Program-made: the position numbers and the translations under genes
DNA from: Podarcis erhardii
Lineage: Eukaryota
Length of the DNA: 64,000 bases
NCBI GenBank assembly: GCA_964252035.1
Contig: OZ176210.1
Reading direction: 5' to 3' (one strand)
Notes under the pieces: model-generated
What the model was told of the DNA's origin: nothing
Seen by the model: the letters and a program-made list of their open reading frames with translations, nothing else
Databases searched by the model: none
In this document: positions 1,348-20,178 of the stretch, one piece after another
How the letters are laid out: the number at the start of each line of letters is the position of its first letter
How positions within the stretch are numbered: the stretch's first letter is position 1

Positions 1348-1570
1348 CTTTTGAAGACCACGATAGTGCTGTGGATGACAGAGACAGCGACTACCGCAGT
1401 GAGACCAGCAACAGCATTCCTCCCCAGTACCACACCACCTCGCAGCCCAATGCTTCGGTGCACCAGTTCCCCATGGCTTCCCGCCTGCAGCAGCAGGGGG
1501 TCCCCCGAGAGTGCTGTGTGGAGTCCCTGCACGGCTATGATTTGGATTACCACGAACGAGCAGCCATCAG
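1348..1570 (+). CDS. UNC13B: UNC13B exon (A)[22 protein letters not shown]...DYHERAAI, phase 1 to 2
   Basis: Acceptor ttgtcctgtcttctag, donor ATCAG|gtaggt; matches the Munc13 [17 protein letters not shown] motif. Confidence 0.95.
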
Positions 1571-2156: not shown

Positions 2157-2282
2157 AAGGCGCCATAGCTTAGACTCCACTGTGAGTGGCCGAACTGACC
2201 TGGAATCTGCATCAGAGTCAAGTCAAATGACAAGCCGCCAGCTGTCATTAGAGAGCCGCCACTCACTAGAGGTGTCTGATAG
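2157..2282 (+). CDS. UNC13B: Candidate 126-nt symmetric cassette exon RRHSLDSTVSGRTDLESASESSQMTSRQLSLESRHSLEVSD
   Basis: Long pyrimidine tract then ttttgaag (NAGNAG alternative start 2160), donor GATAG|gtgggt. Phase 2 to 2, open in the UNC13B frame; TGCATG at 2369-2374. Confidence 0.7.
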
Positions 2283-2914: not shown

Positions 2915-3212
2915 CAGGAGGTAAGAGTCCTGCTGGATCAGGCCAGTGGTCCTCCTTCTCCAGCATCCTGTTCTTACAGTGACTGACCAGATGCCTGGGA
3001 GAAGCTCAGAAGGAGGACCAGAGCCCTCCTCTCCGCTCCTCTCCTGCAGTTTACAGCAACTGGGGCTCAGAAGCATCTCTGCCTGCGACCGCGGAGGCAG
3101 AGCAGAGCCATCATGGCTAGTAGACTTTGATAGCCCTTCTCCCCCATGAATTTGTCTAATCCTCTCTTAATCCAAGTTGGTGGCCATCATTGCTTTCTGT
3201 GGGATAAACTCC
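2915..3212 (-). mobile_element. CR1-type LINE 3' fragment
   Basis: gtcctgctggatcaggccagtggtcc...ccagcatcctgttc and tccaagttggtggccatc match my recollection of the reverse complement of squamate CR1 3' ends. Confidence 0.6.
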
Positions 3213-3620
3213 GTTGAGAGGCTCCAGAAAGTGACTTGTAACATTTTAGGTAGCTGCTCATTGACATTTTTAATCTGCAATTCCTGTTCTTAACAGAAGC
3301 TTATAAATAACATACCATACATCACTTTATAGTATACATAACACTGGTATACATGTTTCGTGCTCTCCTACCCCTACAACCCTACTATTTAGCTGCAGTA
3401 ATAGTAAAAGAGAGATTCCTAACATTTCATGTTAATAAATGGATTCATTGTTATGATATTTTAATATACTTTTTGCATGTGATTCACGATATCATTTGGT
3501 CTTTATGAAATGCTCCTTTGCAAGTTTTGTGTTTAAAGCTCTTTTTTCACCCCTCCTGCCCTTTCCTTTTTTTCTTTGCCCTTCTGTCCTTCTTATATTT
3601 TCCCCCTCCACACGTATCAG

Positions 3621-6600
3621 ACCAGGATCTTTAGTTAGCAATGGGAAAGTCAGGATCATTCCATTTGATTACGAAGTTGGCCAAGAACAGGAAGAGTGTG
3701 AAGAGAACTATGAGGAATTAGGCAAACAGTTAATAGAAGATTTTTTAGAAAAAAGTCACAGGACTAGAAGTTCACAGGGACGAAGGAGCCCGAGGCTCTC
3801 GAAAAGGGAGAACTTTGGCCATCATGAAAGAGGAAGATACTCACGGAAGGCTTGCCCAGAATCAGGACATCCTGATGTTCCTTGCTATCCAGAGGAATAT
3901 GACACAATAGACAGGAGAAGAAAGAAGAAGCTGAGATATAACAATTTTGAAGAATGCGAGCGAACTATACTGCAAAGCAGTAGTAACCGGAGATTTTCAT
4001 CAGGCAGCATTAAAGCAAGAACTGAACATAACCTATATCCTGATTATGATGAAACTGAGAAATGGGGCAGCAGCCCCATTGAAAGTGAAGAACAGTTACC
4101 GGAATATCCAGTTCTGCGTCCATACAAGAATGGCCTTCTAGTCAAGAGTGGCAAGTTGTCCACTAACCAACGCGCAAAGCATGACTCAGGATCAGTCCAT
4201 TTTGATGGTGAAAATGAGATCCATTCAGAACAGCCAGCTCACTCTTTTGTGCCATTGGGTGCCCTTAAAGAGTTTGGCAGCTGTTCGTCCAGCGTAATCC
4301 TGTACTCCCCAGTTTCTGATGATGATGATGATGAAATGGAAGAAATAGCAATACTTTCCCAAGCATGGCGTGAATCCAGTGTTCGCCATGTTGGAGACCT
4401 TACTGACGCCCGTACTGGAAGTGCCATATCCCTGTTACCAAGGGACAAAAGCTCACATAGGATGAGAGGAGGAAAGCACGGCTTTCTTAAGCAAGACTTG
4501 ACCCTCTCTCCTGTTGAAGAGCCAACGGAAGAATACGTGGACACAATGGATGAACTGCAGTGCTTAGTTGAAACTGTGTCTGAATACTTAGCTGAAAAAG
4601 AGGAGGAGATTAGCAAATTCGAAACCCTTCCTGCCAGCAAAAACGCAAGCGGTTGTGCCTCTCCCAAACTGGCCGGTGCTGATAAGTTGGCGGAGGAAAG
4701 TGCCCCTTTGGAACATGCAAAGCCAGCCGCTTCTGCTGCAGAGGAGAGTGAGGGCAGCAAAGGCATAACAGAGGCATTGCCAGACTTGTCTGGGGTGAAG
4801 AACACAGTCAGCTCCTTATTTAGTTCTTTCACCGAAAAAGTGGGCTCAGGAACAAAGCACTTAACAGCCTCAGTTGAAAAACTTGTATCTCCCACACCAG
4901 AGAAATCTGAAGCCCCTGGTCAACCTGAGGGAGGCATCACAAGTCTGTTTTCAAGTAAGCCTAAGTCTGAGGGTGCCTCTCCAGAACTGAAAGCAGAAAA
5001 CAAATCGGAGGCCAAGCTGTCCACGGCAGCCTCCCCTTCTGTGACCCAGAGTAGCCGTGAGCGAGAAGCCAGTGATGCCAAGGCCAAGATCCCAGAAAAG
5101 ACGGCAGGAGACGATAAGGCTCCTCCAAGTGTCCAGGATGCTTCAGCAAGCTCTGCTCCACCCTCTTCTCTGGACCCCAGCTCAGTCGTGAACTCCGTCT
5201 TCGGCATGTTCAACCCTTTGAAAATCTTCTCCGAAAAGGAAGCACCGAAAAAAGAGACTGCAAAACAGGAGGAGGCTGGGAAGGTGGAAGCCACGCATGC
5301 CAGTGCTTCTGAAGCCAAGGCAAGTGCAAAGGCAGCTGAAGGCAACGCGACGAAACCCACCAACGTTGCGCCTCCCGAAACGAGCAAGAGCGAGGCAGAG
5401 GCGAGCGCAGGCAGCGGCCCCGTCTCCTCCATCTTTGGCAAGCTGTCGAGCTCCGTTAGTTCTTTCAGCTTGAAAGCCAGTTTTGAGAGCCTGGCTGTTC
5501 CCAAGCAGCCAAGTGGGCCGCAGAAGGCTTCTGATGCGCCGCTGCAGGCCACAAGTCAGCCAGATAAAGTTGTTAAAGAACACCCAGGCATGCCAAGAAA
5601 TCCACAACCTGCAGGGAAAGTGCCAGAAAACAAGCCAAGTGAAGCCAAGAAGGAGACTGGTAACGCTCCGCCATTGGAGCAGGGGGAACCATCTGAGAGC
5701 TTTTTCAGCCCACTTAAGAAATCCTTCAGCCAGTTGCTACTCCCTTCTTCTGCTACTGAAACTGTGCCAAAGGAGCCACCACCGGGCTTGGGGAAAAGTC
5801 ACCATTCTGAAGATGATGTCAGGAAAACAAGCTCCGCAAGCAGCGAACCCAACTTCCCTTTCACCGGTAAGCTCCAGATTCCCTTTTTGAGCGGTTTTGG
5901 CTTTTCAGACAAACCACCGCAGGACAACAAAGAGAAGCCAGGAATTTTCACTTCCTTCTTGAAAGCTGCTTCTGTGGAAAACCTGACAGCTTCAAGAGAT
6001 CAAACTGCCCCACCAAGTTTTAGTGGCAAGCCACCAAATGCTGAAGAGGGTCACAAAAGCAGCAACGCAGAAGCTGCCAAAACGGAGTCGTCAAAGTCTC
6101 AGGCAGTTCCCGAGGCACCGCAGAGAAAAGAGGAGCCGATGAGGAAGAAAGAAACCAGAAAAGAAGATGGTGCACCAAAACGTGGAGATAAAGACCAGGG
6201 TGCCTCAGACACGTCACAAATTGCACAGATGGATCATGATACCAAACGCATGGGTGCTCTGGACCACAAAGATTCCAAATGCAGGGGGGAGCTGGCAGCC
6301 CCCACAAAAGAACCTGACTTAAATGCTACAGCAGGAAAGCCAGTGCTTCCTGGTGGAATCAGAGAGGACCAGGCAATGGATGATACTCAGAAGAAGGCCC
6401 CACAGCCAGGGCAGGGGTTGCTCTCAGGCCTCTTCCGGCGGGCGTCTTCAGACCACATAACCCACACGGAAGAGTCCAATGCTAAAAATGAAACGGACAG
6501 CCAGAAGAGCAGATCAGCTGGCTTACTTTCTGGATTATTTAGGTTTGCTTCAAGTGAAAACCTGACCGAAACTATGCCAGATAAGGCAAAACCAGGCTCT

Positions 6601-9600
6601 CTGGGCATAATGAAATTTTTTGAGAGGAGCGAAGAGACGAGTTCTGGTGACAAGTCCGTTGGCTCACATGTGACTCCTGGTCCCCAAGAAAGCACTGGGG
6701 GGAAACAGGAGACGGGCAGCTTCATAAAGAACTTCATGCAGAGGCCAAAAGAAAAAGCGGAGGAGGCAGTGACCGAGACTGCGAAGGCGAATGGTCATTT
6801 GCCTCACCCAGAACTGAGCAAAATGGACAACGGACATGGTCCCGTCCCTTGGCAACCCCCCTCTCAGAATGCTTTAAGCTCACAGCCAAAGATACAAGAC
6901 TTATCGGGGCAGCCAACTCTTTATAGACAACCTACGGATTCCAATATTTATCAAGCAGTTCTCAACGAAAGGTCAAATGAATTTCTCAATTCCTCTTTGC
7001 GGAATGCTAAATTGTATGGCCACTCAGAGCAGCATCTTGCTCTTGAGGAAACAAGGAGCCACTCTAGCTTTGACTGGGAATATGATACAGGAGCATTTTC
7101 TCTCAATCCCCACCAGGTTTCCTTGCCCGTTTACTACGTCTTGCAGCAGAATTCTGTCCCACTGGCTGAGTTTCTGGAATGGCCAGACTCCAGTGATGCC
7201 GTAGTGAACTTGTGTAAAAAAGATGGCAATGCTAATGTTGTGGATTGGAGGTCAAATGCCAATTTTGATGCCCTGAGCGTAGATTTCAGTGTCATGTCAC
7301 ACGAATCGTTTGATCAGTTAGACTTACAAGATTTAGGTCTAGAAGAAACTGAAATGTGGGCAACACATTCTCTGAATGGAAACTTTCCTCCATTTGATGA
7401 CTGCAGCTATATTTTGGAAGAGATGCCCATGGACTTAAGCTATTCGTCGGCATGTGATGGCAATATGTGGACCTTAATTGATCAGGAGTGCTTGAGCTTG
7501 GAAGGCAGTTTTGTCTATTCATCTTATAGCCAGGAGTACCAGGACTGGCTGATGCTGCTTGAGAAGGGCGTGTGGTGGCCATCGGAAGATGGCGATTGTG
7601 GATATTACATGTACAGGGACGGTCAGTTTGTTTATTCTCTGCTCACCGACCCCACTGGGCAGTATGTCTACATTTGCACTCCTGACACTTACACCTACCC
7701 AGACTACTGGGATTATAATTATCCGCAGAGCATTTTGCAGAGCACTGTCTTGGAAGATGACATGATTGCCGTTTGCGGTTTCAAAGTGCCTCTTGGTAAT
7801 GAAGACGAGTTATTCTGGTTTGCTGAAGAGGAGCAATTGGATAATTACTCTGTAAACAAACCACTTGATTTGTCTGTAGCTCTGCAGAGAAGTGATCAAC
7901 TTATGAACATGAATTTAGAGACCTTTTCACAGATGTTTGAGGAGTCCATTTATTACCAGAGAGAGCAGCCTTTAGACTTTTCAGGGTACAAACTTCAAAA
8001 ACTCAAAGTAGACTTTAGGCCTGAGAATGACATGGAGTGGCGCTCAGAAGAGCCTCCCCTGACCCTTGACCTTAGAGTTCACTCCAGGGTGGCTTCCAGT
8101 GGGAGGCTAAAAGATGATGCTCTGCCCAAACATCTGGACAGGACCCCTGCTGTGACAGTTTCTGAAAGTGCACAGGCAAGACGGTTTGGTTTCCATATAT
8201 TCCAGTCTTCTGCCAAGCCTGAGCCTTCATCGGCGTCTCAAAGTGTTACAGAAGTCAAAACCACCGAAGAAGATAAAAAGCCACCTCTGAATAAAGTTGC
8301 ATCTTTATTCTCGGCTTTGGGTGGCCTGATGGGTAAGGGTTTGGAAACGCATGAGACAGTGGAAGATGCGGCTGTGAAGAAAGAAGAACCGGTGGTGTTG
8401 GGACACAAAAACGATGCTCTTCCAACTATGCCACCCAGGAAAACAGGAGAGGATATGCAAAACCAGCAGCAGACTGAGCATGAACAAGAGAGAAAAGAGA
8501 GAGGCAGATTAGTTAAGTCTGTTAGGGATGAAAAGCCAATGATTTCTCAGAAAAAGCCTCAGCTGGTGAGGTCTTCCTCTCAGCTAAGCCAGGGTCCCGT
8601 GGACAGCAAGACCAGTCAGCTGGATAAAAGTGTTAAGCCTGCTCCCCTCCCAAGTCAACAGAAACCCAAAGTGGGTGAGGATGAACCCAAGAAAACCCAG
8701 CCAGCCCCCAGCCAAGCGCCCACAGAGGCTGAGGGCACGTTGTTTAAAAGTGCTCTCAAGATTCTCAGCCTGGGAGAAGACTCCTCCACAACTGCAGCAC
8801 CCAATAAAAGTCAAGGCCCCGGGTTCTTTGATTTCTTTAAAACGCAGGTCAACAAAGCCCCACAGCCACCGCCAGCACCCCAACCAAATCTGACGAAAAA
8901 TGAAGCTGAGAAGAAAATGCCTCAGGAGAAAGTGGAGCCCCCAGGCATTTCATCATTCTTTGGTTCCATAGGGGATCTTTTCAAAGTCGATGCAGGCCCT
9001 GCCCCACCAAGTGCTGCTGCTCCACCAAAGAGTGGAACCCACACCTCCCTGAAACCGAATGACAACGCGGACCAGCGTGGCAGAGAGCCAAGTAAGAGCA
9101 GCACTCCTGCTCCTCAAATCCCCGTGGAGCAGGCTCGTGGGGAAGCTGCCCAGAAGGCCGCAGTCCCTAAGGAAGAACAGCATGGCAAAGTAGGCAAGGA
9201 AGCTGCTCCAGTGAAGAAGGAGGACATCCCCACCGCTGGGAATGCAGAACCCAAGCCTCCCATGCAGGCAGGACCTCGAATGGACCAAGCAAATCGCTCT
9301 CCAGGGCAGCATGGCCATGGACCAGCTGTTGCACCGGGACCGCAAGGCCATGCAGGAGCCATACCTGGTAAAGCTCAGCCAGGAAAAGCCAGTCAGCCAC
9401 CCAGGGAGTCTGGGTTTAGCCTGCCTTTTGGCTTGTCACAGGCAGCACCTTCGAAGCCTCCGCAGGCCCCGCAGCCGGCTGGCAAGAGCATCTTCTCCTC
9501 CTTCTTCGGTGCCCCAGAGAAAGGCCCTGCTCCTGCCCCAGCTCCAGCAGCTCCTAATGCCAAGCCCCCGGAAGCAGAGGCTCTGTTCAAGATGCCTTCT

Positions 9601-12468
9601 TTCTTTTCCGGAGGGCCCACCGCAAAGAAGAACGTGCCTCAGAGCAGCTCCAGCTTCAGCTTTTTCAACCTGACCTCCTTCCTGGATGACAAACCACCGG
9701 CAGCTTTTCCTGACAAGGGGAATATCGCAAAGCCACCTCAGCAGCAAGCCAGCAACCTGGGAAGGCCGCCTCAACAGCAAGCAGACGCAAAGCCATCTAT
9801 GAAGCAGTGTGTTTCTGTTGACTCTGGCATTGGACTTGCCAGACAGCAGGGCTTGAAGGATAAAGAGGCAGCGGCGGGTGTTATAGAAGCAGTACTTGGA
9901 AAGCAAGAGGCTGTTGGCCCGGAGCACAAGGCAAGTGAGTTAAGAACTCCTGCGGCTGAGCATGCTGCGGCAAGTGCTTCAGAAGTGAAAAATGAGGTAG
10001 AGATACCCTTTGTGGCCAGTAAACCTCCTGATGATGGCACAGATAGAGAAGACCACTCAGTCTATCCTGATCCTGGCTCTCAGGTCCCTACGCTGCAGGA
10101 AGACATCGCACCTTCCCTTCCGGAGATTCCACAACCAGAGGAGCAGCTGCAAGACAATGCAGAAAAGAGTGGTGGTATTGTGGTGTCCTCTGAGAAGGAA
10201 TTTGTTCCTTTAGTTGGGAACGAGACTTTTGAAAAGGCAGAGCCCGGTCCAGTTTGTGATGAGACCTCTGTGGCTCTTGAGCCATCTGCTGCTCCTGGAG
10301 ACCTTTCACAGGAGGCTGTACCTGAAGAAAAACCAAGCGCCCCTGAAGTCAAGCCCCCGGAGCCCAAGCAACCTGATAGGACCCCAAATACTGCAGGAGA
10401 GCAGCAGGCTCAGGGCCAGAGGCCTCTCCCTCAAATGGCAGCAGCAGCAACACCTAGCCTGCAGGAGAAACCTAAAGAACCTGAGGCTGACAAATCAGTT
10501 CTAGATTCCTCAGTTGAAATGTTTTCCAGCTTCATGACGAAGATGAAACCAACCAAAACATTATCTGGCTTCTTTTCCCAGCCCCAGACTCCAGCAGCTC
10601 CTAGTGCCCAAAAGAAGAGCACTTCGTTTTTCGGCCTTTCCTCCCTGCCCACTGGGCCTCCTCCAGCATTTACAAGCGATCTCTTTGGCATTTTTAAAGG
10701 AGCAACAGATGAGACCCTTTCAAAGCCTGCAGGGAGGACCACAGGCACTTCAAAACCCCAGGAAATGAGCTCCAGGGCAAAGGAGGCTGTGGGCCCAGTT
10801 CCTGGTAAAGGTCTCGCAAAACAAGATAAAGCCTCTAGGGATGAACTTTTAGGGACAAATGCCGGCAGTGTTTTGAAACAACCGGACCAAACCTATAGGG
10901 CTGAACCTACAGAGAAAGAAGCTAGCAGTGACTTGAAACAAGATGCCCCTTCTGCTTTAGCAGATGAGAGTTTGGGAAAAGAATGTAGGGCAGAATTGGA
11001 AGCTGAAAGCAGTGGCAGACCTGAACATGGTCTGGAACCCTCCCTTAATGCTTCAGAAACTTTAGACTCAAGTAGGGATCAGGGCCCTGAAGTGGTACAG
11101 CTGGACACAAACTTACTGGCATCTGATGAAGCAGGGAAGGCTGCCCTGTGTAGTCAAGAGGTACATGATGCAGTTGAGATGGTGGTGCTGCAGGAGAAGA
11201 GTGAAGTGCCTGTGGAGCCCTTAGAAAATGATGCTGTCCCTGCTGTTGAAGAGCAAGTGAGACCGGCAGGAGAAACAGAGGTTGGCCAAATGGATTTGGA
11301 CAGTACACATGAGCTGGAACCCAAGGTTGGTGAGGAAGATGAACACCTGAAACTGCCAGAACTGACGGATACTTCACTAACCACTGAAGAAGTAACTATA
11401 AAGAATGAGGCAGATGTTGATATTTGCCCACCAGACACGTTTGAGACCCTGGAGATGGAACCCAAAGCTGCTGCCGATGAGGCCCATGACTTGCCCCATC
11501 AGGATATAGAAAAGGTCCCTGAAATAAAATCTGATCTTCCTCCTGAGCAGAAAGAGCCTCTAACCATCAGCGAAGCAGCCCCAGAAGCTGCTCCCTTGAA
11601 AAGCAGTTTGGCTGGTAAGAGCAAGCCAGCCAGTGCTCCTACAGAGGCCAGCAGCACCAAGCCCATGTTTGAAATTCCAAGCATGCCCACTTTGCCCAAA
11701 TTCGGCTTCATGTCTTCTGCAGACAGCAGCAAGCCATTTGGCTCCTTCTTCTCTGCACAGCCGCCTTCGGCAAGCAAGCCTGCGCCTGAGCCAGGCCTCG
11801 TGTCCAGCTTCAACAAGTTTTCCTCAAGTCTGTTTGGTGGAGGAAGTGATGAGAAAGCAGGTAAAGTAGAGGGCACTCCGGGTGCTGTGTTTGGAAAGAA
11901 GCTGGACTTCTCATTTCCGTGGCAGAAAGATGCCAAGGAGCCAAGTCTCAAGAAGGAACCAGGTGTGCCAACACCAAAAGCTTCCTCCAAACAGGAGGTG
12001 GCCCCAATTGCTTCATCCAAACTAGATTTGAAGGCACCAGAAGCTGTCTCGAAAGCCGAGGAACAAGCAGTGGATGTGACCGGGGCTGATGGGAGCCCAA
12101 ACCTCTCTGCCTCTGACCAGCCAGCTGACAGTGCTGCTGATTCAGACCTTTCTTCTAAGCAGCCTGACAGCAAGAGCAATGAATGCTTTGATGGTCCCAC
12201 ACCTGACATTCCGGTGGCGCCCAACAAGGAGCTGGAGCTTGAGGTCTCCAGAGAAACGGAAGATGAGCCAAGCACCATTTCCAGTGAGCCTCCTGGGCTC
12301 CCTTTGGAGGAACCAGCAGAAGGTGCCACACAGGTTCTGGATGAAGTAGAGCAGAAGGAAAGTGTCCCTTGTCCAGAAACGGAAACACTTGCTACTGGAC
12401 TGCAGCCAGCGGAGCAGAGTAGCCCTGAGCCACTCAGGAAGAAAAGGCCAGTAGCCAAAACAGCATGA
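3621..12468 (+). CDS. UNC13B: UNC13B giant alternative exon (~8.85 kb, ~2950 codons), mostly low-complexity P/S/E/A/K-rich
   Basis: Uninterrupted ORF; strong pyrimidine tract and acceptor cacgtatcag at 3620, phase 2 and compatible with exon 1348-1570 (AIR|PGSLVSNGKVRIIP). The 3' boundary is unresolved: the ORF ends TGA TAA at 12466-12471. Confidence 0.85.
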
Positions 12469-12969
12469 TAAATGGTGCCAACTTGTGAGCCATTTATAAT
12501 GCAAGTGCCGTAACAGTAGATGCCTGACCTCGTAGATCAGACTCCTCTAGGCTGTGTTTGTCATTAGTAGTATCCAGTGGTAGGTAGAGTTGTGAACGCT
12601 AGTTGCTAGACTGCCCATCCAGAGCCCTTCCTGCCCTTCTCCTTCTCAACTTCTGGTTTCCTTTGTTCCAAAAGGCTGCAATGACTCTTCTCCTTTGCTC
12701 TCCGTTTGTGTTGTGTCCTTGTGAGTGAGCTGCTTTGAGTATTAGTTTCATTAACCTTCCATAGCCTAATTGTGTGCGTGAGAAAACAACTTGCACCTCT
12801 AGTTGACATGGTGGGAGGGAGGAAATCGGGGGCTCTCTTGGTTTGCAGAAAGCTTAGTTGGACAACATACAAGGCATTCACATTTTAAGGTGGGGGAGAG
12901 ACCCAGATGGCAGCAAAAGCTGTTTCAGGGGTTGCAGTTCAGTCACCTGCAGCATAACTTTTCTACGCC

Positions 12970-13194
12970 CAGAAGGGGATTCCGATGAAACATCAGATAA
13001 AAGCTTTCTGACAGTAGCAGCTGTTGAACAGACTCCCTGGGGAGTTGGTGGACTCTCCTTCCTTGGAGGTTTCTAAGCAGAGGTTGCCTGGCCATCTGTC
13101 ATGGATTCTTGAGCTGTGATTCCTGCATTTAGGGGGTTGGGCTGGATGACCCCTGGAGTCCCTTCCAACTCTGCCATGCTAAGATTCTGTGATT
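12970..13194 (+). mobile_element. CR1 LINE 3' end
   Basis: ggactctccttccttggaggtttctaagcagagg...gtcccttccaactct...attctgtgatt, the CR1 3' terminus with ATTCTRTG tail. Confidence 0.75.
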
Positions 13195-14516
13195 AAAACT
13201 TCCTCCCTCCCACCAGGAGGAGTTAAACATGGCCGTGGACTATTAAAGGGACTAATGCAGAAACATCCAGTTCTTGCTGCCCGGAAGCTGTTACTGCCCA
13301 GCTAACATGATTCAATTTTTCTCTATCAGCTGTATTCAGCGGCATTAGCTGAATGTGCTTTTCTGTGTTAGGCTGCAGGCATCTGGAGCCAATGAGGAGC
13401 TCCTTGGTGCCCCCATCAGGTCTCCAATCAAGATGATAACTGGTTTTCTGGTTTACCATTTCTCAAAAACATGCTTAATTGTTCCATATTGAAGAGAACT
13501 GCAGTGATTTCATGTTACAGCTATCAGTATATTAGTGACTTTTGCTCCCTGTTTACCCCTGTCCGGGGGATGATTGGGGTTGGTGTTCTTGCTGCCCCTC
13601 CCTAGTTACAGAACTGCTTGTCACTAAAATCATTGCTAAATCTGCACTCCTCACCCGCCATCTCTAGACAATTGGCCTAGCAGGGATCCTGCTTCAAGCT
13701 TTTCCCTTTCTGCCCAGCCTGTTTCCCAAGGAATAGATGGGATTTTCGCAGTGTAGCTGCCTTGGGTCCTCTTGCAGATGTCTCTGCCTATGTGGGCTGC
13801 CAAAAGCCAGGCGGCACTTAAATAGCGGCCCAGAAGCATTTGTGCCCCTTCCCTCTTAGAATTCCACAATGGAGAGAGAGCGTGTGGGTGTCTTGTTGAA
13901 TTAACAGCTCCTGGTGCAGTAACCCCAACCTTATAATAATCAGTCACTCCCAAGCAGCAACAGCAATGGGCCCATGTTGTGCTGGAAGACAGGGCTGATT
14001 TTTCTAAATGGCAGCTACAACAGGATCCATTCTCAGCCGCTGGAGAAACTTAAGAATGTGTTAATGAAATGGGAGTGAAGATGAAACCCTCATGTCCCAG
14101 AATCCAAGTTCAGTTGACATGCTGGGGGCAAACGTTGTAAGAAGGTGTTGCACTTAGCAGCTTAGAGGTTCAATATGCACAAAACTTTTGCTGCCATTCT
14201 TAATTTTCCTATGGCCTGTAAACAATTTATAGGATGCACAGCAGATGATGATATCTGTTTCTGATTGACATATCAATAGGGTCCAGAGGCTTAGGCCCAG
14301 CACAAAAATTGCAAACACAAATTTGGAAGTGGCGGGTGACTGAGAACAGTGGCTGCAATGTGCAAGAGACATTTTGCTTGGCTAGAGTTTCCATTTGATG
14401 CTTTGGCCTGGTGTAGTTAGGATTTGCGCGCTCTCTCTCTCTCTCTCTCTGCATGCATTCTGCTGTTTCCTGGTTGCCAAGACCTTTTGACTTACTAATG
14501 CTTTGCTCTCTCACAG

Positions 14517-14813
14517 TCCTGCCAGCAGTAGTAAGTTTGGTTCCTCCTGTAACATCAGTCAGGGAAGCTCTCAGCTGAGTGAGCTGGACCAATATCACGG
14601 GAGTGTGCCCGGCTCCGAACACGAGGACGAGCTCACAGAAGGGGTGCCTGCTGCTGCTCCTCCTCATTCAACAGAGGGCCCTGCACCATCTAGTGAGCAG
14701 CATGAGCCCCAGGAATTGCACAGGGAAGGAGAGGGGAAGGTGAAAGAGCAAGCCACACCTCAACTACCTCCTGAAGTGGACGAGCCCAAAGAAGCCACCA
14801 AGACACCGGGCAG
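14517..14813 (+). CDS. UNC13B: UNC13B exon (S)[27 protein letters not shown]...KTPG, phase 2 to 2
   Basis: Branch-like ttactaat, acceptor ctctcacag, donor GGCAG|gtaggt; matches Munc13-2 [28 protein letters not shown]. Confidence 0.93.
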
Positions 14814-14969
14814 GTAGGTGGTGCACGTTGGCCACGGATTCCTTGGAGTTGAACTTGAGGCCACTTTTCTGGTTGATCTTGGGAGAGACAAACAGGCTAT
14901 GGGTGTAGTGCCATACCTGGTTTTGAGTAGTCCACTGGTGTCTAGGGTCAGAAAGGGTGGGACAAACGT

Positions 14970-15239
14970 CATTAAATAAATATAATTAATCCTCCTCTTA
15001 GGTTAGGTTATGCTATGCTTCTAATAGGTTGTGTTATATTCTGGATTATGTATGTTTTAATAGATTATGTCTGAATAGGATGAGAGTGTTGGAGATACGT
15101 GCAAATGTGTATGTGAATCCGGTCTTGGGTGTTTGATTTTCGTTGTTGTGTATACTGTGTATATACGGACAATGACAATAAATTTATCTAATCTAATCTA
15201 ATCTAATCTAATCTAATCTAATCTAATCTAATCTAATCT
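14970..15239 (+). mobile_element. Probable LINE 3' UTR remnant ending in an (ATCTA)10 microsatellite tail
   Basis: TG-rich segment, then gacaatgacaataaa, then (ATCTA)n at 15186-15239. Layout resembles L2/Rex-Babar tails; family not determined. Confidence 0.5.
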
Positions 15240-15501: not shown

Positions 15502-15592
15502 TCACCTTGATGAAAACGAACTTCTCCTGCTTCCCGCTGCAAGAGCCCGCTGGATCCGAGCCATTAATAAAGTGCGGCTTCAGTTTGAAGAG
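15502..15592 (+). CDS. UNC13B: UNC13B exon with the ubMunc13-2 calmodulin-binding motif (AARARWIRAINKVRLQFEE)
   Basis: Acceptor ttttttgcaag, donor GAG|gtaggg, phase 2 to 0; W-x3-[AV]-x2-V CaM anchor of Munc13-1/ubMunc13-2. Confidence 0.95.
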
Positions 15593-16019
15593 GTAGGGTC
15601 CATGAAATGTCCCTCCCCCCATCCTTCCACCTGTGTCTGTGCTTGTAAACCTTGCCGTGACTTTTGTCTGAAGGTTGCTTTGCTTGTCTAAAGGAGACAC
15701 CGTTCTGGGGCAACTGCACAAATGGTGCATGTGCCCCTCTGGTACCAACAACTTGCTGAAGTTGACCGTGGTGGGCTTAATTTGCTGACCCCATGGCAGA
15801 GGGGTGCAGAACTTGTGCCCCACCAGATTTTGTTGGGCTCTTTCCTCAGCCCCAACAGCCAACAGGGCCGGGATTGTGGCGAAGTTGGAGCTCAGCGACA
15901 TCTTGGGGCACGAAGTTGGCTACCTGTGTTGTGTAGAAGAACCAGGATTATTTATGGAAGTGTTGTGTTGACATCACTGTTCCGCTGTGTCTGTAGTTTG
16001 TCTTCTGAGGCCCTTCTCT

Positions 16020-16110: not shown

Positions 16111-18111
16111 ATGCTTTCCCAACCCGTTGTGGGTGTGTGGGAGAGGAGACCCTTCCACGAACTACTGTGCTGCTCCTGGCCGCCTCCCGATTTCACTCCA
16201 GAGAGCACCCAGAAGCCGAGTGTTGTCTGAACAGGCCGGAGCAGAGAGTGGCAGCAGGTTCCCTCTCTGCGCCATTTTGTTGTTGACTTGTGCCACTTGG
16301 ATGCTGCCCTGGCCAGCAGAAGGCCATTGATGTGCCCCAGATCAAAATAGGCTCATGTTTGCAACCTTGTCGTTTTAGATGGATCAGAATTTACACAATG
16401 TCACTGGGCTCTTTCGAGAGTGGGCTTAGCATTGCAACTGTGTTGTTGAGGTATCACAAAAGGGTCCTTAGCAGCAATGATATTTTTCATGGAAAGGGGA
16501 AATCTGAGCTTAAAGTGGGGAAATGCAGGGTGGTAGTTTTAGGGAATTCTGCAAAATAAGAGCATACAAAAGAAGCACCTCGTCCACAAAGAGCACCTAG
16601 CTGACACTGATGCCAGGTTTTCTTAGCAGTTTCTCACGCACGGCAGAAACTGTGTTTTGCTACACAGAGTATCAAAACACTTTTGTAATTCTTAAGCAAG
16701 TCAGAAGCTTGTTGAGTTGAATTAAAAGATCCTGACGGGTATAAGAAATGTGAGATATTTTCAAAAAGCCGTCAACCCAAGAGTTTTAACAGAACAACCC
16801 GGCGAGTTTGTCTGTCTTCTGAAAAATGCTGCTTTGAATCATTTAGTGAATTGTTTTGAAAAGTAAAACTCTCGAGCGCTGGAGGCTTCTGTGCACAAAG
16901 AGAATTGGTGGTGTGTGAACGACAAGCGGCTCCTGATGGCTGCAAGCAGACCCCTCGTGCCTTCACGTGCGTGCCTCCCTCCGCCTGCTTTCTTGTGGGG
17001 CAGAGAAACTGGCAGGATGCACCGTGGAAAGCTTTTGCCACTGCGAGATGCTACACTGGCGTCTCTCCAGAAGCACCAAGGTTTTCTCTTGATGCGTCTC
17101 CTGGGAGCGGGAGATAGGAGTGGAGTACAAACTTGTCTGCGATGAGCAGGAAGGTTCCTTGCGTGCCTGTCAAGATTGGTACATTAACTCTTTTTCGTTA
17201 TTCTGGCTTGTGCTTGTGTTGTGTTTCACTGTTCACGGAAGAGAGTTGTATTCAGTAGCAGCAACAATAAGTTGGGTATCCCCCTTTGCATCTTCTATAA
17301 CCTTTTTTGGAAACTCTTATAGTTGCAATACTCATCCTCAATTGCACCCATTGCAGAGCTGTTCAGGATAGCAAACTATCATCCCAACAGGAATTTGGTT
17401 CCAGTGGAAATAGCATGTTTCAATAATGGACCTGGTGGAGTAGGCTCCATTCCTGAAATCGTTTGACCCAAACTGGAGCCTGGCAATTCAGTCATGCCCT
17501 CGCACATGTGTGTGACCCACATGGTCTGAGTCATCAGGCAAATCAAAGGTTTGGAACGTGGATGCCTTCTTTTGCTTTGGGCAGAGTCTGACTCCCCTGT
17601 GGGCCATGGGACACTCTTGAAATGCAAAGGTGCACACTGGTTAAAGGGTGAATTTCCCCCATTTTGGGGTTCTCCTCTGTTGCAAATGAACCTTAACCAG
17701 TCCTGGGTCAAATCGGGACTTGAAAGCTGTGAACGTTTGGCTGAAATCTTAATCCTTTCACACCAGATACGCTTGGAGTTCAGGCAAGCAAGCCAGACTG
17801 AATTTTGCTCTGCTGCGTTTGTCAGCAGCTGGTACCGCAGCTGTTGTGTGTGGAAAGCAAAACGGAGAAGGAGAGCCTTGTGTGTCTTGTAGATTTAAGT
17901 ACTATGAAGCGAAAGACTGGTCAGAGACACCGTTGTCTGTCTTGGAGTTGCAGGTTCCTGTGCGGGGCTTCTGGTGTGGAAACTTTACATCTAGAGTGCA
18001 AAATAACAAATATGTTTCACGTAGTGTAGAAAAGTCTATACATATGTAGTATTATTCTAAAAGTGTTATGTGGCATATACTTTTGACTTCCCTTTAAAAA
18101 AACTGTTTACA

Positions 18112-20178
18112 ACTGGCTTTCTACCAGGCAGGCAATTGTCAGACAATGTGAGGAATATTATAGACATTTTAGAACTTCTGGAAACTGACATAAATAGAAA
18201 AGCTGTTTTGATTTTTGTGGATGCAGAGAAAGCCTTTGACAATATTTGTTGGAGCTTTATGAAGAGGAATCTCCAAGGGATGGGGGTAGGCAAGAACTTT
18301 GAAAATGGTATAAGTGCAATTTACTCTGAGCAAAAGGCCAAACTAATTGTAAATGGTATGGTTATGGACGAAATTCCAATAGAGAAAGGGACACGACAGG
18401 GATGCCCAATTTCCCCTCTATTGTTTATATCGGTACTGGAGGTTTTCCTAAATATGATTAGAAGAGACCAGCTGGTTAAAGGTATACAGGTCGGAACTAA
18501 ACATTATAAGTTAAGAGCATTTGCAGATGATCTAGTCTTGACATTACAACAGCCAGAAACCAGTACAAAAAGAGTTCTGGAACTTATTGAAATATTTGGT
18601 CAGGTAGCAGGTTTTAAACTAAATAAACATAAGACAAAGGTGTTGGGAAAAAATCTTACGGTGGGGGAAAAAGATAGTTTTCAAAGAGAAACTGGTTTGG
18701 AAATTACTAAAAAGGTAAAATATCTGGGGGTGAATTTAACATCTAAGAATGTGAACCTATTTAAAGACAATTATGAGAAATGTTGGGCCGAAGTGAAGAA
18801 AGATTTCGACATATGGTCAAGATTGAGACTTTCCTTGTTAGGCCGAATTGCTGTTATTAAGATGAATGTATTGCCGAGATTGTTGTTTCTGTTCCAGACA
18901 TTGCAAATTCTAGATAAGATGGACTGTTTCAAGAAGTGGCAGAAAGACATATCTAAATTTGTCTGGCAGGGCAAAAAACCCAGAATAAAATTTAAGATTT
19001 TGACTGATGCAAAGGATAGAGGGGGCTTTGCCCTGCCGGACTTAAAACTTTATTATGAAGCAGCAGCTTTTTGCTGGCTGAAACCATGGCTACTTCTTGA
19101 GAATACAGACATTCTGGACCTGGAAGGTTATGATAATAGTTTTGGTTGGCATGCATATTTATGGTATGATAAGGTAAAGGTACATAGAAATTTTAAAAAC
19201 CATATTGTTAGGAAAGCATTGTATAATGTATGGAATCGATATAAAGATTTGCTTGAAAGTAAAACCCCCAGGTGGTTGTCACCAATGGAAGCCAAGGCGG
19301 TAAAAAGACTGAACATGGATACAGATTGGCCAAAATATTGTGAAATTATAGAATATGATGGTGAAAAGTTGAAACTACAGAGTTTTGAGAAATTGAAACC
19401 TAAAGTCCGAGATTGGTTACATTATTTCCAGATCAATGAAACTTTTAAGCAGGACAGAAAACTAGGATTTCAGAAGGAGAGGTCAAAATTAGAAACAGAA
19501 TTGCTAGAACCCAATACTAAGAATTTGTCTAGAATGTATAATCTGCTGCTAAAATGGAATACACAGGATGAAACGGTTAAATCAGCTATGATTAAGTGGG
19601 CACAGGATATTGGTCATGATATTATGTTTGCTGACTGGGAGCAGTTATGGACCACAGGTATTAAATTTACGGCATGCAGTGCCCTGAAAGAGAACATAAT
19701 GAAAATGATCTATAGGTGGTACATGACTCCAGTCAAGCTTGCAAAGATATATCATTTGCCCAATAACAATTGTTGGAAGTGCAATGAATGTGAAGGAACT
19801 TTTTATCACCTTTGGTGGACCTGCCCAAAGATTAAGGCCTACTGGGAAATGATCTATAATGAAATTAAGAAAATCCTTAAGTGGACATTTGTAAAGAAAC
19901 CGGAGGCTTTTCTCCTGGGCATGGTCGGCCAATTGGTACCAAAGAAAGATAGGACCTTTTTTATGTATGCAACAACAGCAGCAAGAATCCTTTTGGCGAA
20001 GTATTGGAAGACTAAAGAATTACCTACTCTGGAAGAATGGCAGACCAAGGTGACTGAATTTATGGGACTGGCAGAGATGACCGGCAGAATCCGTGACCAG
20101 AGGAAAGAGACAGTGGAGGAGGACTGGAAAAAATTTAAAATCTATCTTAAAAATTGTTGTAAAATTTCGGAATGTTAA
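18112..20178 (+). CDS. L1 ORF2p fragment: reverse transcriptase plus C-terminal CCHC knuckle, lacking the endonuclease
   Basis: Motifs GFLPGRQ, DAEKAFD, GTRQGCPISPLLF, AFADD, YLGVNLT and CWKCNECEGTFYHLWWTC; no stops or frameshifts. Confidence 0.92.
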   Translation, partial: TGFLPGRQLSDNVRNIIDILELLETDINRKAVLIFVDAEKAFDNICWSFMKRNLQGMGVGKNFENGISAIYSEQKAKLIVNGMVMDEIPIEKGTRQGCPISPLLFISVLEVFLNMIRRDQLVKGIQVGTKHYKLRAFADDLVLTLQQPETSTKRVLELIEIFGQVAGFKLNKHKTKVLGKNLTVGEKDSFQRETGLEITKKVKYLGVNLTSKNVNLFKDNYEKCWAEVKKDFDIWSRLRLSLLGRIAVIKMNVLPRLLFLFQTLQILDKMDCFKKWQKDISKFVWQGKKPRIKFKILTDAKDRGGFALPDLKLYYEAAAFCWLKPWLLLENTDILDLEGYDNSFGWHAYLWYDKVKVHRNFKNHIVRKALYNVWNRYKDLLESKTPRWLSPMEAKAVKRLNMDTDWPKYCEIIEYDGEKLKLQSFEKLKPKVRDWLHYFQINETFKQDRKLGFQKERSKLETELLEPNTKNLSRMYNLLLKWNTQDETVKSAMIKWAQDIGHDIMFADWEQLWTTGIKFTACSALKENIMKMIYRWYMTPVKLAKIYHLPNNNCWKCNECEGTFYHLWWTCPKIKAYWEMIYNEIKKILKWTFVKKPEAFLLGMVGQLVPKKDRTFFMYATTAARILLAKYWKTKELPTLEEWQTKVTEFMGLAEMTGRIRDQRKETVEEDWKKFKIYLKNCCKISEC

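What the first reader, a model, noticed from the sequence alone, without database searches (positions are those of the whole stretch)
3621..12468. Intact ~8.85 kb giant alternative exon turning Munc13-2 into a scaffold-sized protein
Seen: ~2950 uninterrupted codons between two ordinary exons that already join in frame without it. Composition is P/S/E/A/K-rich with Q/P-rich stretches, like Piccolo/Bassoon. Known (recalled): mammals have an annotated giant UNC13B exon of similar size, with little functional characterisation. Inference: a priming factor fused to its own active-zone scaffold.
Basis: partly seen in the sequence, partly recalled or inferred. Interest (0 to 1): 0.75.

Follow-up and report, generated by a model that had tools for sequence, protein, structure and literature searches.

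The report
Giant Munc13-2 exon with built-in exit switch
A real, 8.8-kb protein-coding exon sits inside the lizard's Munc13-2 (UNC13B) gene; the same exon is already annotated in other bony vertebrates, from teleost fish to mammals, but its function is unstudied, and its conserved odd splice exit suggests it often ends a long protein that lacks the vesicle-priming part.

Summary
Window 3496-12468 (+) is one open frame of 2,990 codons. The exon starts at 3621, after AG at 3619-20.

It is the lacertid orthologue of the giant UNC13B exon. Databases already model this exon from teleosts to mammals, in long forms of 4,100-6,000 aa and short forms of about 3,000-3,300 aa. Six paper searches found no description of it.

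It is under selection. dN/dS against Zootoca is 0.33, and all eight indels are in frame.

The neighbouring exons (1348-1570, 2157-2282, 14517-14813) are all phase 2. RNA contigs of a related lizard join 1570 directly to 14517.

What this work adds:
- The only in-phase exit is a GC donor, AAAAG|GCCAGT at 12446/7. The AG|GC core is kept in seven vertebrates.
- Six codons further lies a stop overlapping an AAUAAA-type hexamer, inside a deeply conserved non-coding block.
- In two of the four RNA runs laid, contigs run straight through that donor (the other two lack contigs there). No giant-to-next-exon joint was seen.

I therefore read it as a composite internal/terminal exon. It mostly yields a protein with the C2A domain and a roughly 2,950-aa disordered tail, without the MUN domain. 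A "priming factor fused to a scaffold" is possible but not shown here.

The parts
1348..1570 (+). Upstream constitutive exon A of UNC13B (the linker after C2A). It ends ..ATCAG|GTAGGT, phase 2.
   Evidence: tblastn with Zootoca, eagle and turtle proteins. Sequence read. Its 3' end appears as the loose end joined to exon D in RNA contigs.
2157..2282 (+). Exon B, a 126-nt cassette, phase 2-2.
   Evidence: Matches eagle isoform X10 residues 261-308. AG at 2155-56 and donor AG|GTGGGT. Absent from Zootoca models and from the lacertid RNA contigs.
3521..3620 (+). Polypyrimidine tract and AG acceptor of the giant exon.
   Evidence: The region is conserved with turtle (3474-3698).
3621..12446 (+). Giant alternative exon in its cassette form: 8,826 nt, 2,942 codons, phase 2-2.
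   Evidence: Open frame. 91% identity to Zootoca UNC13B X1, and 44-45% to bird long isoforms over 98-100% of the length. dN/dS 0.33, all indels in frame. RNA contigs cover 9100-12446 and reach back to about 6290.
4546..4611 (+). MDELQCLVETVSEYLAEKEEEI, almost unchanged from gar to mammals. It is the core of a confidently predicted 31-residue helix.
   Evidence: Alignment A3. AlphaFold2 helix at residues 24-54, pLDDT 93-94.
4777..4893 (+). The best of five ALPS-like amphipathic segments (..VKNTVSSLFSSFTEKVGSGTKHL..). The others are at 5416-5469, 8287-8358, 8938-9000 and 11791-11850. They belong to about 25 conserved Phe-rich clusters.
   Evidence: Five windows meet the ALPS-type criteria, against 0.26 in shuffles. 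Phe is the most conserved residue (0.61). There are 31 F-F pairs within 4 residues, against 11.7 +/- 3.0 expected.
7159..8091 (+). Central conserved block of about 310 aa. It carries PMDLS (7426-7440), PLDLS (7861-7875), PLDFS and LDL, whose cores are invariant.
   Evidence: Alignment A1, 46-96% identity from gar to Zootoca. P.DLS occurs 3 times against 0.147 expected. A profile search finds it only in UNC13B-type proteins. AlphaFold2 confidence is low, pLDDT 33.
12447..12452 (+). Non-canonical GC donor: AAAAG|GCCAGT.
   Evidence: This is the position where Lacerta, eagle, cat, turtle, gar and stickleback long models join the next exon. The core AG|GC..GT is invariant in DNA of 7 species.
12447..12468 (+). 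Read-through tail (R)PVAKTA plus the TGA stop.
   Evidence: Tails of K-R-P-V-x.. then stop occur in squamates, turtles, axolotl, sturgeon and mammals; birds have K-R-L-V.
12463..12521 (+). Deeply conserved non-coding block. The hexamer GATAAA (12467-72) is AATAAA in turtle, pigeon and sturgeon. The arms 12463-75 and 12490-12502 can pair.
   Evidence: The 13-bp hairpin has no covariation and a z-score of -0.29, so the structure is unproven.
12700..12786 (+). Second conserved non-coding block. It is GU-rich and contains GTGAGT.
   Evidence: blastn hits in turtle (78%) and pigeon (73%).
12999..13198 (+). CR1-like repeat 3' end, with ATTAAA at 13192.
   Evidence: Sequence read. RNA depth is in the thousands, and run X2's coverage stops here. 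PAS scan.
14517..14813 (+). Downstream constitutive exon D, 297 nt, phase 2-2.
   Evidence: RNA contig depth is 63-213, joined upstream to exon A and downstream to the exon at 15502.

Best explanation
Window 3621-12446 (+) is the lacertid copy of the giant alternative exon of UNC13B (Munc13-2). Bony vertebrates from teleosts to mammals share this exon.

Shown:
- It is a selected coding exon of 2,942 codons, in phase with its neighbours.
- The dominant mRNA skips it, joining 1570 directly to 14517.
- Its only in-phase exit is a conserved, weak GC donor at 12446/7.
- Six codons past that donor lies a stop (12466-68) that overlaps a conserved AAUAAA-type hexamer.
- In two runs of a related lizard, RNA contigs read through the donor.

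Inferred:
- The exon is a composite internal/terminal exon.
- If the weak donor is used, the product is a Munc13-2 of about 4,500 aa, with a 2,942-aa disordered insert between C2A and C1.
- If the donor is not used, the product is a protein of about 3,200 aa. It has the RIM-binding C2A domain and the tail, but no C1-C2B-MUN-C2C. In lacertids this second form seems to be the usual one.
- The tail has one invariant helix, about 25 conserved Phe-rich motifs (some ALPS-like) and a conserved block with invariant PxDLS motifs. It would act as a long, multivalent tether or scaffold anchored at release sites through C2A.
For: ORF and splice phases.

Orthology and breadth: 189 hits. Long forms carry C2+C1+MUN and short forms carry C2 only. 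Teleost unc13bb proteins also match.

Selection: dN/dS 0.33, dS 0.12, and 8 of 8 indels in frame against Zootoca. Against the RNA contigs, indels are -6, -3 and +3 inside the ORF but -1, +1, +2, +4 and +5 after the stop.

Skipping: loose ends at 14514 carry the end of exon A in X1, X2 and X5.

Exit: the AG|GC..GT core is invariant in window, Zootoca, camel, turtle, sturgeon, pigeon and snake, including at synonymous sites. Long models splice exactly there.

Stop, hexamer and conserved block.

Read-through: X1 record 1 (9238-12740) and X2 record 18 (11911-13072) cross 12446-12468 unbroken. No 12446->14517 joint appears in any of the 4 runs. The next intron (14814-15000) has no coverage.

Annotations in the nearest genera: Zootoca models (3,208, 3,196 and 3,073 aa) end RPVAQTA-stop. 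The Podarcis LOC144329246 model is unspliced.

Tail features.
Against: - Only assembled contigs were available. They cannot show RNA ends, strand or minor isoforms.
- In run X1, depth stays at 16-19 across the whole 12447-14409 interval. Unspliced pre-mRNA or a retained intron would look the same.
- X5 and X10 show only thin patches in both exon and intron.
- The runs come from a relative about 3.3% diverged, not from the window's own species.
- No joint into 3621 was examined, because read laying allowed one call.
- The hexamer in this lizard is GAUAAA, a weak variant, and contigs run past it.
- The RefSeq model for Lacerta agilis (4,525 aa) does splice at the GC donor.
- The hairpin has no covariation.
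- The tail's tether function is pure inference. AlphaFold2 gave no confident fold for the central block (pLDDT 33).
Confidence: 0.6

Rival explanations
1. It is a plain internal cassette exon. In the right cells it is spliced on both sides and gives only a full Munc13-2 of about 4,500 aa. On this view the read-through contigs are unspliced pre-mRNA, and the stop and hexamer conservation serves splicing control.
For: The exon is phase 2-2 and exactly 3n long. The GC donor is conserved at synonymous positions. Long models splice at this site in Lacerta agilis, eagle, crow, cat, turtle, gar and stickleback. Run X1 covers the whole downstream intron at the same depth as the exon.
Against: No giant-to-D joint appears in four RNA runs where exon D is deep, at 63-213. 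The neighbouring intron 14814-15000 has no coverage, so general pre-mRNA background is low. Run X2's coverage ends near 13072 rather than filling the intron. A stop within 5-8 codons and an A[ACG]UAAA-type hexamer are kept in six of the seven lineages examined (snake differs). From general knowledge, internal exons of 8.8 kb are very hard to define, and GC donors with C at +3 are weak.
Confidence: 0.25
2. It is an independent, intronless gene nested in a UNC13B intron. RefSeq annotates it that way in Podarcis muralis, camel, painted turtle, softshell turtle, sturgeon, axolotl and several birds ('uncharacterized protein LOC...'). It would be transcribed from its own promoter and translated from an internal or intronic ATG.
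For: Many stand-alone models of 2,500-3,000 aa exist. The RNA contigs are unspliced at the 3' side. The Podarcis model begins in the upstream intron.
Against: The Podarcis start ATG is ATA in this window, so that start is not conserved even within lacertids. The frame opens exactly at a strong acceptor, in the same phase as exons A, B and D. The GC donor is conserved. Models with C2A joined to the exon exist in Zootoca, Pogona, Paroedura, zebra finch and manakin. No promoter evidence was obtained.
Confidence: 0.1
3. It is a decaying or non-functional open frame: a chance or relic ORF in an intron.
For: There is no Pfam domain. Composition is low in complexity. Much of the sequence evolves fast, with deep identity of 0.10-0.25 in several 100-aa bins.
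Against: The chance of such an ORF is about 1e-62. The frame is open in teleosts, gar, sturgeon, axolotl, turtles, squamates, birds and mammals. dN/dS is 0.33 and only in-frame indels occur. Conserved blocks reach 0.7-0.83 identity.
Confidence: 0.01

Closest known systems
Predicted long and truncated UNC13B isoforms in RefSeq/Ensembl. Examples: Lacerta agilis XP_033020586.1 (4,525 aa), Zootoca vivipara XP_060136397.1 (3,208 aa), Podarcis muralis LOC144329246 (2,999 aa), and bird and mammal 'isoform X1' models of 4,100-4,550 aa.
   Same: It is the same exon: same position in the gene, same phase, and 91-94% protein identity to other lacertids. The GC exit and the read-through stop are also the same.
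   Different: Nothing essential differs. This window's species is not among those records; the best match is 94.3%. The three lacertid annotations disagree on how the exon is used. This report traces that disagreement to the GC donor followed by a stop.
ubMunc13-2 and bMunc13-2, the two described products of Unc13b (Kawabe et al. 2017, PMC5379939).
   Same: It is the same gene. The skipping mRNA seen here (A joined to D) is the ubMunc13-2 type. The bMunc13-2 first exon lies downstream at 38196-40838.
   Different: The giant-exon forms are a third class of product that the papers found do not mention. They insert 2,942 aa after the C2A linker, or end there.
Composite internal/terminal exons, where a weak 5' splice site competes with a nearby poly(A) site. 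The immunoglobulin mu secreted/membrane switch is the classic case (from my own knowledge).
   Same: Weak donor, in-frame stop a few codons on, an AAUAAA-type hexamer beside it, and two annotated products that differ in their whole C-terminal half.
   Different: Cleavage at the hexamer is not shown here. Contigs run past it, the donor is GC rather than a weak GT, and the exon is 8.8 kb.
Giant neuron-specific exons of ankyrin-B (440 kDa) and ankyrin-G (480 kDa) (Chen et al. 2020, PMC7401806).
   Same: A single multi-kilobase alternative exon adds a long, mostly unstructured stretch with embedded short binding motifs to a well-known neuronal protein.
   Different: There is no sequence relationship. 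The ankyrin exons are ordinary internal exons. Tissue specificity is unknown here.
Piccolo/Bassoon active-zone scaffolds.
   Same: Size class, P/S/E/A/K-rich disorder, and the presence of PxDLS-type motifs. Such motifs bind CtBP/RIBEYE in Bassoon and Piccolo (from my own knowledge).
   Different: There is no homology. No Piccolo zinc finger or other Pfam domain is present, and the profile search returns only UNC13B proteins.
ALPS amphipathic lipid-packing sensor motifs (ArfGAP1, GMAP-210, synapsin; from my own knowledge).
   Same: Five 18-residue segments have a high helical hydrophobic moment, a Ser/Thr/Gly-rich polar face, few charges and bulky Phe/Leu residues.
   Different: This is only a compositional and periodicity match. 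Most of the roughly 25 Phe clusters are shorter than an ALPS helix. Membrane binding is untested.

Membership tests
UNC13B (Munc13-2) giant alternative exon, orthologous group | Lies on the gene's strand between the post-C2A linker exons and the bMunc13-2 first exon / C1-coding exons. | tested here: met
   tblastn exon map: 1348-1570, 2157-2282, 3621-12446, 14517-14813, ~15502-15625, 52901.., 56055.., 57052.., 60071... The b-type exon ORF is at 38196-40838.
UNC13B (Munc13-2) giant alternative exon, orthologous group | End-to-end similarity to the insert of annotated UNC13B long isoforms. | tested here: met
   91% identity to Zootoca; 44-45% to birds over 98-100% of the length; 29-37% to mammals; 33-34% to axolotl, sturgeon and gar.
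UNC13B (Munc13-2) giant alternative exon, orthologous group | Length is a multiple of 3 and the phase matches the neighbours, so skipping and inclusion both keep frame. | tested here: met
   8,826 nt. Exons A, B, giant and D are all phase 2.
UNC13B (Munc13-2) giant alternative exon, orthologous group | Purifying selection on the reading frame. | tested here: met
   dN/dS 0.33, 8 of 8 indels in frame. Indels against the RNA contigs are 3n only inside the ORF.
UNC13B (Munc13-2) giant alternative exon, orthologous group | Inclusion in mature mRNA joined to the upstream UNC13B exons, in this lineage. | tested here: inconclusive
   Contigs of a related lacertid cover the exon at depth ~19, against 213 for exon D. 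The 5' joint was not examined, and intron-like coverage exists in X1.
Composite internal/terminal exon (weak 5' splice site versus adjacent poly(A) site) | Weak or non-canonical donor at the internal-exon exit. | tested here: met
   AAAAG|GCCAGT has C at +2 and +3. No in-phase GT donor lies before the stop.
Composite internal/terminal exon (weak 5' splice site versus adjacent poly(A) site) | In-frame stop shortly after the unused donor. | tested here: met
   TGA at 12466-68, 6 codons after the split codon. The tail is 5-8 codons in six of the seven lineages examined; in the snake the stop is shifted further downstream.
Composite internal/terminal exon (weak 5' splice site versus adjacent poly(A) site) | A functional poly(A) signal and cleavage site next to the stop. 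| tested here: inconclusive
   The hexamer is GATAAA here, AATAAA in turtle, pigeon and sturgeon, and CATAAA in camel and snake. Contigs run past it and cannot show RNA ends. ATTAAA at 13192 fits where X2's coverage ends.
Composite internal/terminal exon (weak 5' splice site versus adjacent poly(A) site) | Both the spliced and the terminated mRNA exist. | tested here: inconclusive
   Both exist as RefSeq models in lacertids. RNA contigs show only the read-through form. The junction census in the protein collection found only genomic-type ORFs.
ALPS motif | Amphipathic helix of 18 aa or more, with an S/T/G-rich polar face, few charges and bulky hydrophobic residues. | tested here: met
   5 segments against 0.26 expected (maximum 2 in 200 shuffles). 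One segment is predicted helical at low confidence.
ALPS motif | Curvature-dependent membrane binding. | not testable with these tools
   Needs liposome assays.
CtBP/RIBEYE-binding PxDLS motif | P-x-D-L-S core present and conserved. | tested here: met
   PMDLS and PLDLS have invariant D-L-S from gar to mammals. P.DLS occurs 3 times against 0.147 expected, P=0.0005.
CtBP/RIBEYE-binding PxDLS motif | Binding to CtBP1, CtBP2 or RIBEYE. | not testable with these tools
   Needs pull-down or ITC.
Piccolo/Bassoon family | Shared domains (Piccolo-type zinc fingers, homology regions). | tested here: not met
   Pfam finds no families. The profile of the central block hits only UNC13B-type proteins among 1.84 billion representatives. 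PDB searches find none.

The most novel reading that the evidence does not exclude
UNC13B has an ancient third product that the Munc13 papers found here never mention. It is a protein of about 3,200 aa made of the RIM-binding C2A domain and a 2,950-aa tail, without the MUN priming machine. A GC-donor / stop / poly(A) switch conserved for over 400 million years selects it. The tail carries multivalent Phe-rich (ALPS-like) motifs and invariant PxDLS motifs. Through these it would tether vesicles or ribbons (RIBEYE/CtBP) at release sites, or compete with full Munc13s for RIM.
Probability: 0.35. Interest if true: 0.7.

Novelty: already known. Interest (0 to 1): 0.45.

Why it matters
Munc13 proteins are among the most studied parts of the transmitter-release machinery. 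Yet the Munc13 papers found and read here name only ubMunc13-2 and bMunc13-2 as products of Unc13b (PMC5379939).

An exon that nearly triples the protein, or replaces its whole priming half, has been kept in frame from teleosts to mammals. It contains a 22-residue stretch that is almost unchanged across that span.

If the GC-donor/stop arrangement really is a switch, three things follow:
- It explains why annotation pipelines give three incompatible models for one locus.
- It predicts a C2A-only giant protein that could anchor to RIM at active zones or ribbon synapses. ubMunc13-2 is the Munc13 of retinal ribbon synapses (PMC7660176).
- It gives simple handles for experiments: donor and hexamer mutants, exon deletion, and antibodies to the invariant helix.

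For this window alone, the finding is an orthologue of an already annotated exon.

Tried and rejected
- **Pfam** on the whole exon translation: no family, even at E 0.1.
- **PDB sequence searches** with profiles of the central block and the N-terminal conserved region: nothing at E 1.
- **AlphaFold2 on the central block**, with an 18-sequence alignment: pLDDT 33. I made no fold search, because a poor model gives meaningless matches.
- **Conserved hairpin after the stop:** 13 pairs, none covarying, fold z-score -0.29. I keep it only as a possibility.
- **Rfam** on 12300-13300: only chance-level hits inside the repeat.
- **Junction census.** I searched the protein collection with a bird fragment spanning the giant-to-D joint. 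It returned only genomic-type ORFs, either intron read into exon D or the read-through tail, so it was uninformative.
- **Two Logan contigs carrying the exon** (L006, L007) proved to be genomic, with introns in place.
- **Ideas I first held and dropped.** I thought squamates had lost a GT donor and that birds had GT. DNA shows GC in all seven species, pigeon included.
- **A GT donor at 12451** is out of phase and gives an immediate stop after splicing (reading).
- **Teleost, gar, gecko and axolotl DNA** could not be fetched.
- **Six paper searches** found no description of the exon.
- **Human material.** I fetched no primate or human-looking contig.

Full report
**1. The observation**

The ORF listing finds one open frame of 2,990 codons on the + strand, 3496..12468 (translation). 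At about 50% G+C, the chance of no stop over that length is about 1e-62.

The frame is preceded by a long polypyrimidine tract and AG at 3619-3620. That base is the third position of a codon, so the intron before it is phase 2.

Composition is S 11.6, P 10.1, E 9.9, A 9.1, K 7.9 %.

**2. Gene context**

tblastn with long UNC13B proteins maps the neighbouring exons. Reading the junctions gives:

| Exon | Window coordinates | Note |
|---|---|---|
| A | 1348-1570 | |
| B | 2157-2282 | 126-nt cassette |
| giant | starts at 3621 | |
| D | 14517-14813 | |
| next exon | starts at 15502 | |
| C1-side exons | from about 52.9 kb | |

A, B and D are all phase 2 at both ends. A bMunc13-2-type first exon is open at 38196-40838, and a LINE reverse-transcriptase ORF lies at 18070-20178. 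The exon thus sits in the ubMunc13-2-specific part of the gene.

**3. Relatives**

The word-indexed protein search returned 189 hits.

- The best is Zootoca vivipara 'protein unc-13 homolog B isoform X1' (3,208 aa, 91% identity, Pfam C2 only).
- Other squamates follow, then turtles, and birds at 44-45% identity over 98-100% of the exon.
- Further out are mammals (29-37%), axolotl, sturgeon and gar.

Two kinds of model recur. Long ones (4,100-4,950 aa) carry C2, C1 and MUN. Short ones (about 2,500-3,400 aa) carry C2 only or no domain.

The cluster of the best hit holds three incompatible lacertid models:

| Species | Model | How the exon is used |
|---|---|---|
| Lacerta agilis | 4,525 aa | internal exon |
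| Zootoca vivipara | 3,208 / 3,196 / 3,073 aa | ends in the exon |
| Podarcis muralis | LOC144329246, 2,999 aa | unspliced stand-alone gene |

The window is 94.3% identical to Podarcis, 91.4% to Lacerta and about 91% to Zootoca. It therefore comes from another lacertid.

A profile of the central block, searched against 1.84 billion representatives, found 68 proteins. Those I looked up are UNC13B-type or unnamed models, and they include teleost unc13bb proteins of 4,900-6,000 aa. The exon therefore dates at least to the ancestor of bony vertebrates, and I could detect no paralogue.

**4. Selection**

Against the Zootoca orthologue (locus L001), dN = 0.040, dS = 0.121 and dN/dS = 0.33. All eight indels are whole codons.

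Constraint is strongest at 4522-4971 and 7222-8121 (dN/dS 0.11-0.20).

Against the RNA contigs of another lacertid, indels inside the ORF are -6, -3 and +3. Downstream of the stop they are -1, +1, +1/+4, +5/+2, +2 and -1. A decaying ORF is excluded.

**5. The exit**

No GT donor in the right phase lies before the stop. Another first-stage note (s1-244816) concluded there is 'no phase-2 exit'.

Comparing the long and short models locates the exit:

- Eagle and crow long forms read ..EQLNEK|S|PADSSRYGSS.
- Zebra finch's short form reads ..EQLNKKRLVTNEA-stop.
- Lacerta reads ..LRKK|S|[10 protein letters not shown].
- Gar and stickleback read ..VK|S|PAGSS and ..AK|S|PVESS.

The joint is therefore after AAAAG at 12446, and the intron begins GC: AAAAG|GCCAGT. 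3621-12446 is 8,826 nt, or 2,942 codons, phase 2-2.

I checked the DNA of seven species: the window, Zootoca, camel, painted turtle, sturgeon, pigeon and garter snake. All show AG|GC[C/T][A/T]GT. In the six non-snake species the preceding AAAAGG (Lys-Arg) is unchanged even at its synonymous positions. Pigeon also has GC, so my first idea that birds have GT was wrong.

With C at +2 and +3, this donor pairs poorly with U1 (general knowledge).

**6. What follows the exit**

Reading through gives (R)PVAKTA and then TGA. The same K-R-P-V-... tail and a nearby stop occur in squamates, turtles, axolotl, sturgeon and mammals. Birds have K-R-L-V.

The stop overlaps a hexamer:

| Hexamer | Species |
|---|---|
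| AATAAA | turtle, pigeon, sturgeon |
| GATAAA | this window (12467-72), Zootoca |
| CATAAA | camel, snake |

Around it, GCAU.AUAAAUGG and CCAUUUAU.AUGCA are almost invariant. In the snake the first stop is lost, but both blocks remain. The constraint is therefore on the RNA or DNA, not on the peptide.

The two blocks can form a 13-bp hairpin, but no pair covaries and the fold is not better than shuffles. The structure is therefore unproven.

A second conserved non-coding block lies at 12700-12786. Rfam has nothing here.

**7. RNA evidence**

I had one runs search and one read-laying run.

No listed holder is recorded as RNA. However, X1, X2, X5 and X10 are clearly cDNA: their contigs carry exon D joined to the next exon at 15502. 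These are three studies, assembled contigs only, from one organism whose contigs differ from the window by about 3.3%. In X1, X2 and X5 the listed upstream loose ends also join exon A's last bases to exon D.

- The main mRNA therefore skips both B and the giant exon. Exon D depth is 213, 213, 106 and 63.
- The giant exon is covered by long contigs at depth about 19 in X1 and X2. X1 has 3,500 nt over 9238-12740. X2 has a 5,643-nt contig reaching back to about 6290, plus 11911-13072.
- These contigs cross 12446-12468 without a break and continue downstream.
- No 12446->14517 joint is reported in any run.
- The next intron (14814-15000) is empty in all four runs.

Caveats:

- In X1, depth stays at 16-19 all the way to 14409. 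An unspliced intron would look like that.
- X2 stops near 13072, inside a CR1-like repeat that is followed by ATTAAA at 13192. A hole in contig coverage proves little.
- X5 and X10 show only thin patches.
- Contigs cannot show RNA ends, strand or rare isoforms.
- The 5' joint was not examined.

**8. Reading**

The sequence architecture is that of a composite internal/terminal exon: a weak conserved donor, a stop a few codons on, an AAUAAA-type hexamer, and deep non-coding conservation.

Together with the read-through contigs and the Zootoca and Podarcis models, I take the usual exon-containing product in lacertids to be C2A plus tail without C1-C2B-MUN-C2C (about 3,200 aa). The full 4,500-aa form would be a regulated minority or a tissue-specific product.

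This is inference. Confidence is about 0.6 for the composite reading, and above 0.95 that it is a selected coding exon of UNC13B.

**9. What the tail contains**

There is no Pfam domain and no PDB relative. An 18-species alignment shows mostly fast-evolving disorder, punctuated by conserved islands:

- **(a) Invariant helix.** MDELQCLVETVSEYLAEKEEEI (nt 4546-4611) is almost invariant from gar to mammals. AlphaFold2 predicts a 31-residue helix here with pLDDT 93-94.
- **(b) Phe-rich clusters.** There are about 25 ([ST]S-L/I-F-S/G-S-F and similar).
  - Phe is the most conserved residue outside the central block, at 0.61 against 0.12-0.48 for the others.
  - F-F pairs within 4 residues number 31, against 11.7 +/- 3.0 expected.
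  - FG, FF, SF and FS dipeptides are enriched 2-3 fold.
  - Five 18-mers meet ALPS-type criteria, against 0.26 in shuffles.
- **(c) Central block.** It spans about 310 aa (7159-8091) and is 46-57% identical to fish and mammals. The P.DLS motifs have invariant cores (PMDLS, PLDLS), and PLDFS and LDL are also invariant. P.DLS occurs 3 times against 0.147 expected. AlphaFold2 gave pLDDT 33, so I claim no fold.

From established knowledge:

- Munc13 C2A binds the RIM zinc finger (see PMC5436228).
- PxDLS is the CtBP/RIBEYE-binding motif.
- ubMunc13-2 is the Munc13 of retinal ribbon synapses (PMC7660176).

A C2A-anchored, multivalent tether or scaffold is therefore the most economical function. Nothing here tests it.

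**10. Comparison with the known, and novelty**

The exon itself is already in public annotation for close relatives and for most vertebrate classes. As a sequence feature it is already known.

Six full-text searches found no paper describing it. A standard account of the gene lists only the ub and b forms (PMC5379939).

This report adds:

- the conserved GC exit;
- the conserved stop, hexamer and non-coding block;
- an explanation for the three conflicting lacertid models;
- a motif map of the tail.

Analogues are the giant ankyrin exons (PMC7401806) and the immunoglobulin-mu type of composite exon (my own knowledge). Piccolo/Bassoon membership was tested and not met.

**11. Limits and housekeeping**

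- DNA of axolotl, gecko, gar and stickleback could not be fetched.
- I fetched no human or primate contig.

Noticed in passing
window 18070-20178 (+): A 702-aa ORF that looks like a LINE reverse transcriptase (..AFADDLVL..) lies inside the UNC13B intron. A 71%-identical copy lies on the other strand of the Zootoca locus (L001 29452-30512).
   Followed up: no
window 12999-13200: This is the 3' end of a CR1-like repeat (..GGGTTGGGCTGGATGACCCCTGGAGTCCCTTCCAAC..ATTCTGTGATTAAAAC). RNA-contig depth reaches 3,000-11,000, which breaks every assembly here. It supplies an ATTAAA at 13192, where run X2's coverage of the giant-exon transcript ends.
   Followed up: partly
window 2157-2282 (+): Exon B is a 126-nt phase 2-2 cassette. 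It is used in the eagle X10 model but absent from Zootoca models and from the lacertid RNA contigs, which join exon A straight to exon D.
   Followed up: partly
window 4546-4611 (+): The 22-residue stretch MDELQCLVETVSEYLAEKEEEI is nearly invariant from gar to mammals. Its hydrophobic spacing (L, LV, V, YL) recalls docking helices of the AKAP type. AlphaFold2 gives a confident helix. No partner was tested.
   Followed up: partly
window 12700-12786 (+): A second conserved non-coding block lies about 250 nt after the stop (turtle 78%, pigeon 73%). It is GU-rich and contains a consensus-like GTGAGT. Its role is unknown.
   Followed up: no
L008 (Thamnophis elegans) 11170-11290: In the garter snake the first stop after the GC donor is lost. 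The tail reads on (..RPVANAAHKWRRPVHL-stop) through both conserved blocks, which stay nearly intact as nucleotides.
   Followed up: yes
window 14425-14452: A (CT)n microsatellite sits inside the polypyrimidine tract just upstream of the exon D acceptor. The reads tool skipped 14420-14462 as repeat.
   Followed up: no
window 38196-40838 (+): An 880-aa open frame is the bMunc13-2-type alternative first exon. It places the giant exon in the ub-specific part of the gene.
   Followed up: no
L002, L003, L004, L005 (camel, painted turtle, sturgeon, pigeon): RefSeq annotates the giant exon in these species as a separate 'uncharacterized protein LOC...' gene, nested inside a UNC13B gene model. The same locus therefore carries two overlapping gene records.
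   Followed up: partly
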